Origin: Macrostomum lignano
Taxonomy: Eukaryota
Direction: 5' to 3'
Length of the DNA stretch: 64,000 nt
Assembly (NCBI GenBank): GCA_002269645.1
Contig: NIVC01000267.1
Span: 62,001-126,000 of the forward strand
The notes below the pieces were generated by a model. The model did not search any database, was not told the DNA's origin, and was given only the letters and a program-made list of their open reading frames with translations. This document shows, one piece after another, positions 22,401-63,847 of the stretch. The first letter of the stretch is position 1. The number at the start of each line of letters is the position of its first letter. The position numbers and the translations under genes were made by a program.

Positions 22401-24013
22401 CAGTCCCTATTCAGAAAGCTAATGGCCATTCATTCAGCTTCTCTGATAAATAAAGCCTTTTAACCTTATGCGGAAACTAGCAAATAATTCTCTTCCACTG
22501 TATCTACACCAAGCTTTATATACGGATTTTTCTACTCACTCCTCACAGATTATCAGCCTGAGCCTTCACCTCATCTGCCATCAGCCTGAGCCTCCTCACC
22601 CCATCAGCCTGAGCCCCCACCCCATCAGCCTGAGCCTCCACCCCATCAGCCTGAGCCTCCACCCCATCAGTCTGAGCCTCCACCCCATCAGCCTGAGCTC
22701 CCAACCCCATCTGCCATCAGCCTGAGCTCCCAACCCCATCTGCCATCAGCCTGAGCAACTCCTTACCAAAGCCGGCCCGGCGGGTCCCGCCAGCCCCCGG
22801 CACGAATCTTCGAGCCCGTCCGAAGGCCTTCGCCGAATCCGGGCACTCCAGTTGAGTTGTCGACAGTCGCATCGGCACCGCGGGCTTGACAAGCCGGCTG
22901 GTGGGCTCGGACAGCAACGGCGTCAGCTGCTCCGGACGGCTGAGCTGGCCGGCCTGCAGCAGCGCTGCGTCCACCTGGGAGAGCGCGGCCCGACTGTCCA
23001 GCAGCTGGCGGGCGAGCTCTGACCTGCGTTGGCGCTCCGCTGCTCGGCGCTGCAGGGCCGAGTCGTGCAGGCTGAGCGACGAGGGTCAAACAGTGCAGCT
23101 TATTAGTGGGTGAGTCCGCTCGGATACTTACACGCGGGCACTCACGCAGGGTGCGCAGTGGCCCTGTTTTTATGTACTATGTACTTTATGACACTATGTA
23201 CGAGGTGCTACCTGAGCAACGCAATCTGTCTGGACCAATCGGAGCCGTGCATTGCATTCGAGCATGTGGCGCAGTGACCCGAGCAGCAGCAGGCCTGAAA
23301 TACAACATCCTGGATGGACTATTGTGGGGCAATCCGCTTGATCAAACTAATGCAGCCAGTCAGTCTCACCAGTCTGTGAGAGTGCTTCGGTTGCTGCTTC
23401 CGGTAGTTAAACTTTTTGCTTCGTCGGCTAAGCATCCCCTTCTCATTGCTTTCGTTTCTGGCGCCGTTTGGTCTCTAAAAGTAAATAATTTGCATAAGAA
23501 ACATCAGTTTTAATAAAAAGTTTCCATTGTTACTCACTCAATAGATCTCATTCTCACCTTCTGCTCCAGATAGCGCACCCGCTCCCAGTTCAAATTGAGG
23601 CTGACGAATTTTCCACCAGGGCAGCTGTGCGACTCCGCGCTTCTGGCTCTGCTGGGACCGCTTGCCGGGGTCTGTTGAAGTTGTCAGCATTTGATGGACG
23701 CATGTATCGCGCGCTGACAGACAGACAGACAGACAGACAGACAGACAGACAGACAGACAGACAGACAGACAGACAGACAGACAGACAGACAGACAGACAG
23801 ACAGACAGACAGACAGACAGACAGACAGACAGACAGGCAGGCAGACAGACAGACAGACAGACAGACACTAAGACAGACAGGCAGACAGACAGACAAACAG
23901 ACAGACAGACACTAAGACAGCCTCACCGAATAGTATCGAGTGTCTTGCGCCTCAAACCCGAGCGCTGAGCAGCGGCCAGACTGGCTGCTAGACTGGCTAC
24001 CGTAAAAGACCAT
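13491..24013 (-). CDS. Uncharacterised 411-aa protein with a coiled-coil segment and polyQ, 6 exons
   Basis: Exons 24013-23927, 23671-23558, 23049-22767, 21946-21791, 16880-16551 and 13756-13491. All junctions are GT-AG and phase-compatible (0,0,1,1,1), total 1236 nt. Protein: [13 protein letters not shown]|[16 protein letters not shown]|[17 protein letters not shown]..|AHQ(23)PTWSS..|[23 protein letters not shown]|AGSQRSG..KENC*. No family recognised. Confidence 0.65.
14282..15627. repeat. 24/26-bp minisatellite (copy 3, expanded)
   Basis: Same units. Joins directly to the CCAAT-containing repeat without the unique segment. Confidence 0.95.
15628..16030. repeat. About 27-29-bp tandem repeat containing CCAAT
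   Basis: Unit ACACCCCTCATCCAATCAGAACCTTAGAC. Shorter runs occur at about 12325-12406 and 14200-14281. Confidence 0.9.
17621..21786. repeat. 30-bp minisatellite, about 139 copies, intronic
   Basis: Unit GACATGA(C/T)ACACATTGCTCTAACTGATGCA in perfect 30-bp register for about 4.1 kb. Confidence 0.99.
21873..21941 (-). repeat. (CAG)23 trinucleotide repeat, read as polyglutamine in the predicted exon
   Basis: Pure (GCT)n on the plus strand within exon 21946-21791. Confidence 0.9.
22556..22756. repeat. 21/27-bp tandem repeat next to a splice donor
   Basis: Units such as CCCCATCAGCCTGAGCCTCCA. The array begins about 10 nt into the minus-strand intron. Confidence 0.85.
23716..23920. repeat. (GACA)n microsatellite filling intron 1 of the minus-strand gene
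   Basis: About 50 GACA units. Confidence 0.97.
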
Positions 24014-24566
24014 TTTGTAACCTCGGGCAGACATTGCCTGTCAGTTAGTGTGTAGCAGCTAAGCTGCAATCTAGAGCCTGTAAGAATCCTTTTTATATGC
24101 TGTCAAACGACACCATCATGACAATGCTCTATCCCCGCCCATCCGTCTGTCTTCCTGGAGATGAAGGGGCGAGCCAGCAACTTCCCTTCGCTGCTACCCG
24201 CCATCCCGGATGTTAATTCCGCTGCTGGTCCCGGACGATATTAAAGTTTGCCTTGTACAGAGGATTGCAGAGCGGAGGGAAGTGCGACATGACTATCAGT
24301 GCAAGACATTCTTTAGAAATCTTTAAGCGCTTCTGTCTGCCTCTCAGCTTTTGCAAGTCTCTGTCAGCTTCTCAGCGTCTATGGCAAGCGGTAGGGGGCT
24401 CTGTGAGCCAGATATCCACCCTCCATGATGTCAACTGCCGCATGCAAGAACGCGGCTATGAATGCAGATACTTATTGACTTATACACGGCGTCCATTTTT
24501 CGAAGATAACATAAAAACAGTCGATTTTTTTGATAGCATCAAACAGACAAAGAGAGTCATTGAAAC

Positions 24567-62600: not shown

Positions 62601-63847
62601 AATATCCCCTTCCTCAGGTAGAATATCCCCTTCCCCAGGTAGAATATCCCCTTCCCCAGGTAGAATCTCCCCTTCCCCAGGCAGGTAGAATCTCCCCTTT
62701 CCCAGGTAGAATCCCCCCTTTCCCAGGTAGAATCTCCCCTTCCACAGGTAGAATCTCCCCTTTCCCAGATAGAATCTCCCCTTTCCCAGGTAGAATCTCT
62801 CTTTTTCCAGGTAGAATCTCCCCTTCCCCAGGTAGAATCTCCCCTTCCCCAGGCAGGTGGAATCTCCCCTTCCCCAGGTAGAATCTCCTCTTTCCCAGGT
62901 AGAATCTCTCCTTCCACAGGTAGAATCTCTCTTTTCCCAGGTAGAATCTCCCCTTCCCCAGGTAGAATCTCCCCTTCCCCAGGTAGAATCTCCTCTTTCC
63001 ACAGGTAGAATCTCCTCTTTCCCAGGTAGAATCTCCCCTTCCACAGGTAGAATCTCCCCTTTCCCAGATAGAATCTCCCCTTTCCCAGGTAGAATCTCTC
63101 TTTTCCCAGGTAGAATCTCCCCTTCCCCAGGTAGAATCTCCCCTTCCCCAGGCAGGTAGAATCTCCCCTTTCCCAGGTAGAATCTCCCCTTTCCCAGGTA
63201 GAATCTCCTATTTCCCAGGTAGAATCTCTCTTTTCCCAGGTAGAACCTCCCCTTCCCCAGGTAGAATCTCCCCTTTCCCAGGTAGAATCTCCCCTTCCCC
63301 AGGTAGAATCTCCCCTTTCCCAGGTAGAATCTCTCTTTTCCCAGGTAGAATCTCCCCTTCCCCAGGTAGAATCTCCCCTTCCCCAGGCAGGTAGAATCTC
63401 CCCTTTCCCAGGTAGAATCTCCCCTTTCCCAGGTAGAATCTCCTATTTCCCAGGTAGAACCTCCCCTTCCCCAGGTAGAATCTCCCCTTTCCCAGTTTCT
63501 TCTCCCAAACAGAATCCCCTTCAGGAACTGAGGGGGGGGGGCTACCACAGAAAGTTCCCAAACTTCCCAAAAAATCGCCACCTTCTACATAGAAAAAAAT
63601 TAAAATCCCAGAGTTGAAAAATCCCCCTATTAAACCCTACGTACCGCCTTCGCCAGCCAACAGCCACGACCACACGGTGCAGCAGGTGGCGCTGCTCAAA
63701 CGCGAGCTGGCCGAGATGCGGTCGCGGCAGGCGCTGGCCGAGACCGGCCGGTACTCGCAGACTCCCACTGGCCTGGCTGGGGACCTGGACAAGGAGCTGG
63801 GATCCACCGGATTGGCCAGGATTGCCACCACGAATGCTGAGCTGCAG
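56664..63847 (+). CDS. FHAD1: Forkhead-associated-domain coiled-coil protein (FHAD1-like), 3' partial
   Basis: Exons 56664-56765, 56842-56928, 57462-58112, 58571-58663, 59593-59825, 60249-60790, 61028-62533 and 63657-63847, all phase-consistent. N-terminal FHA domain ([13 protein letters not shown]|..[14 protein letters not shown]|[16 protein letters not shown]), long coiled coil and the FHAD1-like motif [32 protein letters not shown]. Confidence 0.85.
57050..57445. repeat. Degenerate about 23-bp CT-rich tandem repeat (intronic)
   Basis: CCAGCATCCTCTCCCCATCCTAT units. Confidence 0.88.
58170..58495. repeat. 38-40-bp minisatellite (intronic)
   Basis: CTAGCTGAGCTAATGTACACTCCCGCTATCCCCCCGACCC. 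Confidence 0.92.
59150..59545. repeat. 29/30-bp minisatellite (intronic)
   Basis: CCCCAATCCTTCATC(A/T)TTCCAGCCTCCATC. Confidence 0.92.
59840..60145. repeat. 22-bp minisatellite containing the adjacent exon-intron junction motif
   Basis: Unit GGATTGACAGGTGATTGAGAAT versus the real junction GTTGACAG|GTGAGT at 59825/59826. Confidence 0.93.
62590..63495. repeat. 21-bp minisatellite, about 42 copies (intronic)
   Basis: Unit GGTAGAATCTCCCCTT(C/T)CCCA, with some 25-bp CAGGCAGG variants. Confidence 0.96.

What the first reader, a model, noticed from the sequence alone, without database searches (positions are those of the whole stretch)
23927..63847. Candidate RFX-controlled ciliary gene neighbourhood whose known members are all on human 1p36
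Seen: TTLL10-like, CFAP74 and FHAD1-like genes lie within 40 kb. They form two head-to-head pairs (unnamed 411-aa gene / TTLL10, about 550 bp apart; CFAP74 / FHAD1, about 915 bp apart), with X-box-like motifs in the gaps. Established: TTLL10 glycylates axonemal tubulin, CFAP74 is a central-pair component and FHAD1 is cilia/sperm-associated. Human TTLL10 and CFAP74 map to 1p36.33 and FHAD1 to 1p36.21. Inference: this is a remnant of ancient bilaterian linkage and/or a co-regulated motile-cilia cluster. That would make the two unnamed genes here candidate new ciliary proteins.
Basis: partly seen in the sequence, partly recalled or inferred. Interest (0 to 1): 0.72.

Follow-up and report, generated by a model that had tools for sequence, protein, structure and literature searches.

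The report
Three flatworm cilia genes as neighbours
In a Macrostomum lignano flatworm contig, TTLL10-like, CFAP74 and FHAD1-like genes really do lie within 40 kb, and CFAP74 and FHAD1 start back-to-back 915 bp apart, but the proposed RFX binding sites are no better than chance and the arrangement is absent in the other animals I could check, so this looks like an ordinary, probably lineage-specific neighbourhood.

Summary
The window is Macrostomum lignano contig NIVC01000267.1, about 62001-126000.

**Confirmed**
- The TTL-domain gene (24567-26310, +) falls in the TTLL10 subfamily.
- CFAP74 (43593-55748, -) is unambiguous.
- The FHA/coiled-coil gene (56664 to beyond the window, +) has FHAD1 architecture. 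Its FHAD1 identity rests partly on a human sequence I recalled from memory.
- CFAP74 and FHAD1-like are head-to-head, exactly 915 bp from ATG to ATG.

**Partly confirmed**
This would belong to an unannotated gene 532 bp from TTLL10. My models give 394-457 aa, with no homologues found.

**Not confirmed**
- X-box-like motifs in both gaps are at chance level.
- The best site is GTCGCTTTTAGTAAC (56594-56608). About 10% of shuffled versions of the gap score as well.

**Against a tight cluster**
- An IDO-like dioxygenase gene and a small unknown gene separate TTLL10 from CFAP74.
- M. lignano has at least five TTLL10-like paralogue groups.
- CFAP74 has no FHAD1 or TTLL10 neighbour in Capitella, Solemya or Elysia, and TTLL10 has none in Owenia or Opisthorchis.

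**Most likely reading**
CFAP74 and FHAD1 form a lineage-specific divergent pair that shares a promoter region, and TTLL10 is nearby by chance or residual linkage. Chromosome-scale linkage could not be tested.

The parts
23927..24034 (-). Candidate first exon of an unannotated minus-strand gene. It has an ATG at 24034, 36 codons and a GTGAGG donor.
   Evidence: Sequence read. Further candidate exons lie at 22767-23071, 16551-16880, 13539-13756 and 11616-11870, based on codon usage and a crude spliced model of 394-457 aa. There are no Pfam or PDB hits, and it is not in the GenBank gene calls.
24035..24566 (.). Gap A: a 532-bp spacer between the candidate minus-strand ATG and the TTLL10-like ATG.
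   Evidence: Only X-box-like sites with 2 mismatches are present. The count is 3 against 1.7 expected, and 23% of shuffles do as well.
24567..26310 (+). TTLL10-family tubulin ligase gene, 474 aa (BOX15_Mlig010031g2). Exons are 24567-24843, 25041-25978 and 26101-26310.
   Evidence: Searches give the domain and the exact match to the annotated protein. Searches give the TTLL10-named best hits. One search shows other TTLL types are more distant.
30026..32847 (+). IDO-like (indoleamine 2,3-dioxygenase family) gene of about 403-405 aa. Exons are 30026-30760, 32260-32408 and 32520-32847. A 31-bp tandem array fills intron 1.
   Evidence: Pfam IDO scores 1.4e-28. GenBank calls a 405-aa gene with PF01231. 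The splice model is, and the tandem array.
39811..40675 (+). Small unannotated gene of unknown function. The main exon is 40097-40675. The candidate ATG at 39811 sits inside the palindrome GTCTCCATGGCAAC (39805-39818).
   Evidence: The codon-usage score is 117 bits. The ORFs are listed. There are no Pfam or PDB hits. The single-sequence AlphaFold model is unusable, with pLDDT 32. The motif was found.
43593..55748 (-). CFAP74 orthologue with at least 15 exons. The ATG is at 55748. Introns are filled with tandem repeats.
   Evidence: Pfam CFAP74 Ig domains, orthologue hits, colinear tblastn alignment, N-terminal profile hits and the exon 1-2 junction. The GenBank model covers only 48569-55748.
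55749..56663 (.). Gap B: a 915-bp spacer with 29.5% G+C between the divergent CFAP74 and FHAD1-like start codons. It is a putative shared promoter region.
56594..56608 (+). The best X-box-like match in gap B: GTCGCTTTTAGTAAC, with a 3-nt spacer and 1 mismatch. It ends 55 bp upstream of the FHAD1-like ATG.
   Evidence: 97 of 1000 shuffles of the gap contain a site at least as good.
56664..64000 (+). FHAD1-like gene (BOX15_Mlig004584g2, 1374 aa). Exons in the window are 56664-56765, 56842-56928, about 57456-58112, about 58568-58663, about 59593-59826, about 60250-60783, about 61030-62532 and about 63653-63847. The gene runs about 2.4 kb past the window end.

Best explanation
This is an ordinary gene-dense stretch of the Macrostomum lignano genome.

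- CFAP74 encodes a central-pair projection protein. The FHAD1 orthologue encodes a protein with an N-terminal FHA domain and a long coiled coil, found in motile cilia.
- The two genes are transcribed in opposite directions from a 915-bp AT-rich spacer.
- That spacer most likely works as a shared, bidirectional promoter region, so both genes are switched on together in cells that build motile axonemes.
- The TTLL10-family ligase gene lies 17 kb beyond the far end of CFAP74. It is on the other side of an IDO-like dioxygenase gene and a small unknown gene.
- TTLL10's presence is most simply a coincidence or residual linkage, and the expansion of the TTLL10 family in this species makes that more likely.

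Shown here: gene identities, orientation and spacing. Inferred: shared promoter use and control by ciliogenic transcription factors (RFX, FOXJ1).
For: - Orientation and spacing are established.
- Gene identities are established.
- Mouse Cfap74 and Fhad1 are co-regulated direct targets of RFX1/2/3 (PMC7498320).
- FHAD1 protein localises to motile cilia in the human fallopian tube (PMC13096173).
- FHAD1 is a candidate central-pair-associated protein (PMC12979858).
- Fhad1 knockout mice have reduced sperm motility (PMC10984166).
- Established knowledge, not tested here: head-to-head genes less than 1 kb apart commonly share regulatory sequence.
- TTLL10-like genes fall into at least five paralogue groups in M. 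lignano.
- The IDO-like and unknown genes lie between TTLL10 and CFAP74.
Against: - There is no expression data, and the transcription start sites are unknown. M. lignano uses spliced-leader trans-splicing widely (title and abstract of PMC8629364, listed), so promoters may lie elsewhere.
- The X-box evidence is at chance level.
- The pairing is not seen next to CFAP74 in Capitella, Solemya or Elysia. If it is functional, it is a local innovation.
Confidence: 0.5

Rival explanations
1. Remnant of ancestral bilaterian linkage. On this view TTLL10, CFAP74 and FHAD1 sat on one ancestral chromosome, as they still do on human 1p36, and their closeness in the flatworm is a surviving fragment of that linkage rather than a functional unit.
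For: - Human TTLL10 and CFAP74 are both in 1p36.33-p36.32.
- FHAD1 at 1p36.21 and its relative CCDC27 at 1p36.32 are from my own knowledge.
- The flatworm protein carries a precomputed Pfam Ccdc27 hit.
- About 2-3% of human genes lie in 1p36. By that rough estimate, three out of four nameable genes landing there is unlikely for a single pre-chosen window.
Against: - Flatworms are reported to have lost the ancestral linkage groups (PMC12359876).
- No microsynteny was found in five other taxa.
- The IDO-like gene in the middle has its human relatives on chromosome 8 (my own knowledge).
- M. lignano has at least five TTLL10-like paralogue groups, which multiplies the chances of a coincidence.
- The window came from a genome-wide scan, so the coincidence was selected after the fact.
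Confidence: 0.2
2. Pure chance juxtaposition with no shared regulation. On this view the three cilia genes, including the divergent pair, simply ended up near one another in a heavily rearranged genome, and each gene has its own promoter.
For: - By my rough estimate, if about 3% of genes are motile-cilia genes, three of six neighbours being ciliary has a probability of about 5e-4 per window. That predicts several such windows in a genome of roughly 12,000 windows.
- The motif evidence is at chance level.
- The arrangement is not conserved elsewhere.
Against: - A 915-bp head-to-head spacing between two genes that are co-regulated in mammals is a specific configuration, and such pairs usually share regulatory sequence.
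- Forkhead-core-like motifs are modestly over-represented in the spacer: 9 observed against 3.7 expected, matched by 1% of shuffles. This was one of several motif tests.
Confidence: 0.25
3. A selected, RFX-controlled motile-cilia gene cluster spanning all 40 kb, in which the unnamed genes are also ciliary.
For: - Three of about six genes are cilia-related.
- The mammalian orthologues of two of them are RFX targets.
- An X-box-like palindrome, GTCTCCATGGCAAC, lies at the start of the unknown gene at 39805.
Against: - X-box matches in the two promoter gaps are at chance.
- The best consensus matches in the window lie inside coding exons (25727 and 49235) or overlap a CCATGG start-codon context (39805).
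- One intervening gene is an IDO-like dioxygenase.
- The unknown genes match no PDB chain. From my own knowledge the PDB now holds most structurally resolved axonemal proteins, so a known axonemal protein would probably have been found.
- There is no conservation in other taxa.
Confidence: 0.07

Closest known systems
Bidirectional (head-to-head) gene pairs sharing a promoter region of less than 1 kb
   Same: CFAP74 and the FHAD1-like gene are divergent, with 915 bp between their start codons. They are functionally related: both are motile-cilia genes, and their mouse orthologues are co-regulated.
   Different: Transcription start sites and co-expression are unknown here. The pairing is not found next to CFAP74 in the other animals examined, and in humans the two genes are about 13 Mb apart (my own knowledge).
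RFX/X-box ciliary regulon (daf-19 targets in C. elegans, Rfx in Drosophila, RFX1/2/3 in mammals)
   Same: The mammalian orthologues of two of the genes are direct RFX targets (PMC7498320). One near-consensus site ends 55 bp upstream of the FHAD1-like ATG, which is a typical position for an X-box.
   Different: That site has an atypical 3-nt spacer and one mismatch, and 10% of shuffled spacers do as well. No site better than 2 mismatches is present in the TTLL10 gap. Neither conservation nor RFX dependence has been tested.
Conserved microsynteny blocks and ancestral linkage groups of bilaterians
   Same: The human orthologues of the three named genes share chromosome band region 1p36.
   Different: Adjacency is not seen in Capitella, Solemya, Elysia, Owenia or Opisthorchis within about 10 kb. 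Flatworm genomes are reported to be scrambled. Membership of a common ancestral linkage group could not be tested.
TTLL10 polyglycylase, CFAP74 (Chlamydomonas FAP74, C1d projection) and FHAD1
   Same: Domain content and best matches fit each family. By eye, the ATP-grasp motifs of the TTLL10-like protein look intact: KP...GKGI, QEYI, DLRVY, HLTN and WLIEIN.
   Different: The TTLL10-like protein is short (474 aa), only 33-37% identical to named TTLL10s, and one of several divergent paralogues. The GenBank CFAP74 model is truncated. FHAD1 identity rests partly on a human sequence I recalled from memory.

Membership tests
TTLL10 (tubulin polyglycylase subfamily of TTL-like ligases) | TTL/ATP-grasp catalytic domain | tested here: met
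   Pfam PF03133 scores 3.1e-28. The ATP-grasp motifs are visible in the P0001 sequence.
TTLL10 (tubulin polyglycylase subfamily of TTL-like ligases) | Closer to TTLL10 proteins than to any other TTLL type | tested here: met
   The exhaustive search gives top hits of 150-197 bits. Of the 17 named hits from other organisms, 13 are named TTLL10 or TTLL10-like, from mammals, a bird, a salamander, a fish, rays, bivalves and Clonorchis. One Acanthaster hit is named 'probable beta-tubulin polyglutamylase', and three carry uninformative or unrelated names. TTLL6, TTLL7, TTLL3, TTL and TTLL11 in the PDB score 25-74 bits.
TTLL10 (tubulin polyglycylase subfamily of TTL-like ligases) | One-to-one orthology with human TTLL10, which the 1p36 argument needs | tested here: inconclusive
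   M. lignano has at least five TTLL10-like paralogue groups: Mlig010031, Mlig002769/015915, Mlig023574, Mlig016686 and Mlig027771/011895. No tree was built.
TTLL10 (tubulin polyglycylase subfamily of TTL-like ligases) | Glycine-chain elongation on axonemal tubulin | not testable with these tools
   This needs an enzyme assay.
CFAP74 | The four CFAP74-specific Ig-like domains, in order | tested here: met
   PF24771 scores 3e-43, PF24778 scores 1.5e-26 and PF24798 scores 9e-21. PF24770 appears in the precomputed annotation of the GenBank model.
CFAP74 | Colinear similarity along full-length orthologues | tested here: met
   Ten to eleven colinear HSPs align to Tubulanus and Antedon CFAP74. The N-terminal profile hits four further exons in order. 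There are 169 homologues at E<=1e-10, nearly all named CFAP74.
CFAP74 | Location in the central-pair C1d projection | not testable with these tools
   This is known for Chlamydomonas FAP74 from the literature (my own knowledge).
FHAD1 | FHA domain at the extreme N-terminus followed by more than 1000 aa of coiled coil | tested here: met
   Pfam FHA scores 1.4e-12 at residues 27-93 of the 1374-aa protein. The rest of the protein is rich in E, A, R, L and Q, with no other domain.
FHAD1 | Conserved C-terminal FHAD1/CCDC27-type region | tested here: met
   A precomputed Pfam PF28447 (Ccdc27) hit is on record for the product; the local Pfam copy lacks this model. The memory-based part is a lead, not a test.
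FHAD1 | Best reciprocal match is FHAD1 rather than CEP170, SLMAP or another FHA protein | tested here: inconclusive
By BLASTP the FHA domain scores 53.9 bits and 37% identity against recalled human FHAD1, versus 48.9 bits and 29% against the CEP170 FHA domain from PDB 4jon. No CEP170 C-terminal domain is present.
RFX/X-box-regulated ciliary genes | X-box (GTNRCC N0-3 RGYAAC) in the promoter-proximal region, beyond chance | tested here: not met
   Gap B has one site at 1 mismatch with a 3-nt spacer, and 9.7% of shuffles do as well. Gap A has none better than 2 mismatches. Counts of sites within 2 mismatches are at chance in both gaps.
RFX/X-box-regulated ciliary genes | Motif conserved in orthologous promoters, and expression dependent on RFX | not testable with these tools
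   No second Macrostomum copy or related species could be fetched, and there are no expression data.
Conserved bilaterian synteny block | The same genes adjacent in other phyla | tested here: not met
   There is no FHAD1-like or TTLL10-like sequence within about 10 kb of CFAP74 in Solemya, Elysia or Capitella, nor in two metagenome contigs. TTLL10's neighbours are BORCS8, GST and NAPRT in Owenia, and only a 146-aa unknown gene in Opisthorchis.
Conserved bilaterian synteny block | The same chromosome or ancestral linkage group in slowly rearranging invertebrates | not testable with these tools
   Only 10-kb flanks can be fetched. The supplementary tables of PMC8809688 are not held. No species overlapped between the CFAP74 and TTLL10 hit lists.
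Bidirectional promoter pair | Head-to-head orientation with less than 1 kb between starts | tested here: met
   The distance from ATG to ATG is 915 bp. Transcription start sites are not known.

The most novel reading that the evidence does not exclude
The divergent CFAP74/FHAD1 pair reflects a real functional partnership. On this reading FHAD1 is a central-apparatus protein that works with the CFAP74-containing C1d projection and is co-regulated with it. The linkage of TTLL10, CFAP74 and FHAD1/CCDC27 would then be an old cilia-gene linkage, kept from the bilaterian ancestor to both a scrambled flatworm genome and human 1p36.
Probability: 0.1. Interest if true: 0.55.

Novelty: new member of a known kind. 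Interest (0 to 1): 0.25.

Why it matters
If the 915-bp spacer is a working bidirectional cilia promoter, it would be a compact and handy driver for ciliated-cell transgenes in M. lignano, a flatworm with established stable transgenesis (PMC7053086 and PMC5730564, listed). It would also add genomic support to the recent suggestion that FHAD1 is linked to the central pair.

The wider claims would matter more. These are an RFX-controlled cluster and an ancient linkage that nominates new ciliary proteins. This sequence does not support them, so the practical value is mostly better annotation:
- a TTLL10-family member;
- a full-length CFAP74, where the GenBank model is truncated;
- an FHAD1 orthologue currently labelled as a hypothetical protein.

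Tried and rejected
- **Word-indexed homologue searches.** For the TTL ORF and the FHA N-terminus these returned almost nothing beyond M. lignano itself. TTLL10 identity was therefore settled with the single exhaustive search plus cluster names. The same could not be done for FHAD1.
- **Look-ups of isoform X2 proteins** of Tubulanus and Antedon, and of Acropora CFAP74. None were on record.
- **The FHA gene is not clearly CEP170.** CEP170 is the best PDB match for the FHA domain, but it scores lower than recalled FHAD1, and the rest of the protein is coiled coil with the FHAD1/CCDC27-type C-terminus.
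- **Single-sequence AlphaFold of the unknown exon 40097-40675.** It gave pLDDT 32, so no fold search was run.
- **Supplementary tables.** The ancestral-linkage paper (PMC8809688) has none held. The M. lignano papers' supplements do not contain the gene ids Mlig004584 or Mlig010031.
- **Window-wide X-box enrichment.** I counted 11 matches against 5.1 expected and set this aside. Two sites are palindromes counted twice. Four lie in exons that are richer in G+C than the window average, so a whole-window shuffle underestimates their expected number.
- **The 1360-aa 'pentapeptide repeat' gene at 17.6-21.7 kb.** It is a 30-bp tandem array open in several frames and is not part of the story.

Full report
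**Where the window comes from.** The TTL-domain ORF is 100% identical to a Macrostomum lignano protein. The contig that carries it is NIVC01000267.1 of assembly GCA_002269645.1, and it matches the window base for base. Window position 1 corresponds to contig position 62001. The sequence has G+C-rich exons and introns packed with tandem arrays.

**Gene content of 23.9-64 kb, in order.**

1. *Candidate unannotated gene, minus strand.* An ATG at 24034 opens 36 codons that end at a GTGAGG donor. GenBank calls no gene here. However, minus-strand segments at 22767-23071 and 16551-16880 have coding-like codon usage (54 and 70 bits). A crude GT-AG spliced model gives 394-457 aa. None of the segments has a Pfam hit, and the one I searched against the PDB (16465-16869) has no match.
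2. *TTLL10-like gene, 24567-26310, plus strand, three exons, 474 aa.* My exon concatenation reproduces the annotated protein exactly.
3. *IDO-like gene, 30026-32847, plus strand*. By eye it keeps the GGSAAQS motif and the proximal histidine region.
4. *Small unannotated gene, about 39811-40675, plus strand.* It has strong codon-usage support (117 bits) but no Pfam or PDB match.
5. *CFAP74, 43593-55748, minus strand.*
6. *FHAD1-like gene, from 56664, plus strand.* It runs about 2.4 kb past the window end.

**TTLL10 identity.**
- The word-indexed search found only M. lignano paralogues and two distant proteins.
- Against solved structures the protein is about equally far from TTLL6, TTLL7, TTLL3 and TTL, at 53-74 bits. 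It is therefore none of those types.
- The exhaustive HMMER search found 76 representatives at E<=1e-30. The top hits score 150-197 bits at 30-37% identity.
- Of the 17 named top hits from other organisms, 13 are named polyglycylase TTLL10 or TTLL10-like. They come from Chinchilla, Macrotis, Rhynchocyon, Perognathus, a cuckoo, Pleurodeles, Xenentodon, rays, Mya, Pinctada, Clonorchis and a JGI entry. One Acanthaster hit is named 'probable beta-tubulin polyglutamylase', and three have uninformative or unrelated names.
- The same look-ups show at least five divergent TTLL10-like gene groups in M. lignano. So 'TTLL10-like' is right, but one-to-one orthology with the human gene is not established.

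**CFAP74 identity.**
- The CFAP74-specific Ig domains are present.
- 169 homologues at E<=1e-10 were found, nearly all named CFAP74.
- Exons are colinear with Tubulanus and Antedon proteins.
- A profile built from the N-terminal 520 residues of 70 orthologues hits four more minus-strand exons in order, up to 54791.
- Exon 1 (ATG at 55748) ends at a GTAAGT donor and joins the next exon in frame.
- GenBank places the same start at 55748 but truncates the gene at 48569.

**FHAD1 identity.**
- The first three exons were read directly from the sequence. They are confirmed by a 388-aa transcript-derived protein and by the 1374-aa GenBank product.
- Pfam finds an FHA domain at residues 27-93 and nothing else in my local copy.
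- The precomputed annotation adds PF28447, the Ccdc27 family.
- The best solved relative of the FHA domain is CEP170.
The FHA regions align at 37% identity and 53.9 bits, against 29% and 48.9 bits for CEP170.
- The recalled C-terminal 323 residues were typed before I had seen the flatworm C-terminus. They align colinearly over 239 residues at 77.8 bits and E 1e-19. The alignment includes the motifs CxGxRH...ALSELRxRxKxLE and RK(D/E)xLLxGYxxD.
- I therefore accept 'FHAD1-like', but a proper reciprocal test is still owed.

**The two head-to-head pairs.**
- The CFAP74/FHAD1 pair is confirmed. The spacer 55749-56663 is 915 bp with 29.5% G+C.
- The unnamed-gene/TTLL10 pair depends on an unverified gene model. 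If that model is real, the spacer is 532 bp.

**X-boxes.** I used the consensus GTNRCC N0-3 RGYAAC.
- Gap B contains one site within 1 mismatch: GTCGCTTTTAGTAAC at 56594-56608, with a 3-nt spacer. 97 of 1000 dinucleotide shuffles of the gap contain a site at least as good.
- Gap A has nothing better than 2 mismatches.
- Sites within 2 mismatches occur at 3.3 per kb across the window, and both gaps are at expectation.
- The cleanest matches in the window lie inside coding exons, at 25727 in TTLL10 and 49235 in CFAP74. One more overlaps the CCATGG start context of the unknown gene at 39805.
- The sequence therefore neither supports nor excludes RFX control.
- The prior from mammals is favourable. 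Mouse Cfap74 and Fhad1 are both among the 28 most strongly downregulated genes bound by RFX1, RFX2 and RFX3.
- Forkhead-core-like heptamers (TRTTTRY) are somewhat over-represented in gap B: 9 against 3.7 expected, matched by 1% of shuffles. The stricter TGTTTRY is not: 3 against 1.4, matched by 17%. I treat this as a weak lead.

**Linkage.**
- Human TTLL10 and CFAP74 lie in the same 2.8-Mb interval of 1p36.33-p36.32. FHAD1 at 1p36.21 and CCDC27 at 1p36.32 are from my own knowledge.
- Only 10-kb flanks of orthologues could be fetched. In Solemya, Elysia and Capitella, and in two intronless metagenome contigs, no FHAD1-like or TTLL10-like sequence lies beside CFAP74.
- Owenia TTLL10 sits between BORCS8/GST and NAPRT. 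Opisthorchis TTLL10 has only a small unknown neighbour.
- Flatworms are reported to have lost the bilaterian ancestral linkage groups.
- Adjacency is therefore not an old, conserved feature.
- Whether the three genes share an ancestral chromosome stays open.
- My rough chance estimates suggest that a genome-wide scan would turn up a few windows with three cilia genes by chance. The TTLL10 expansion raises that number.

**Verdict.** The interpretation goes beyond it. The solid and mildly useful result is a divergent CFAP74/FHAD1 pair with a compact putative shared promoter. FHAD1 is also a literature candidate for central-pair association. The RFX-cluster idea and the nomination of new ciliary proteins are not supported. 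One intervening gene is an IDO-like dioxygenase, and the two unknown genes have no detectable relatives.

Noticed in passing
window 17621-21768: A 30-bp unit is repeated about 138 times and is open in several frames on both strands. GenBank annotates it as a 1360-aa protein, and it scores as 'pentapeptide repeat' in Pfam (E 2e-108). This is almost certainly an annotation artefact of a minisatellite. If the candidate minus-strand gene is real, the array would lie in one of its introns.
   Followed up: partly
window 43593-48569: The GenBank CFAP74 model (1181 aa) stops at 48569. Homology to full-length CFAP74 continues through at least five more exons, down to about 43593.
   Followed up: yes
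M. lignano proteins P0001, P0128/P0275/P0276, P0002/P0305, P0154/P0299, P0157/P0310: The TTLL10-like family is expanded in M. lignano. There are at least five divergent groups on different contigs, about 35-42% identical to the window's copy where I measured it (P0128, P0002).
   Followed up: partly
window 39805-39818 and 40533-40546: Two near-perfect X-box-like palindromes, GTCTCCATGGCAAC and GTTGCCATGACTAC, lie at the start of and inside the small unannotated plus-strand gene. The first overlaps the candidate ATG. The reading frame changes shortly after that ATG, which suggests either a short intron or an assembly indel.
   Followed up: partly
window 55749-56663 (sites at 55916, 56082, 56088 and others): Forkhead-core-like heptamers (TRTTTRY) number 9 against 3.7 expected in the CFAP74/FHAD1 spacer, matched by 1% of shuffles. 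The stricter TGTTTRY is not significant. This could be a FOXJ1-type input or simply AT-rich sequence.
   Followed up: partly
window 1531-6180: A single-exon ORF of 1549 aa on the plus strand carries Tudor domains and an internal 111-bp repeat (4384-4889). It is probably a germline Tudor-domain protein gene and lies outside the finding.
   Followed up: no
window 11372-12027 and 13247-13902: There is a near-identical duplicated segment of about 650 bp, flanked by arrays of the same 24/50-bp repeat (10251-11332, 12407-13208, 14281-15622). The duplicated part has coding-like codon usage on the minus strand.
   Followed up: no
L004 10001-14464 and L005 10001-14146: Intronless full-length CFAP74 genes (1487 and 1381 aa) occur on long metagenome contigs. 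One contig carries a gene with a Pox_A32 domain nearby. The source organisms are unknown, perhaps intron-poor protists.
   Followed up: no
window 30894-32172, 44658-45695, 46082-46689, 57055-57449, 62578-63495 and others: Nearly every intron of the IDO-like, CFAP74 and FHAD1-like genes is filled by its own tandem array, with 20-31-bp units and up to 43 copies. These arrays produce long spurious ORFs on both strands.
   Followed up: partly
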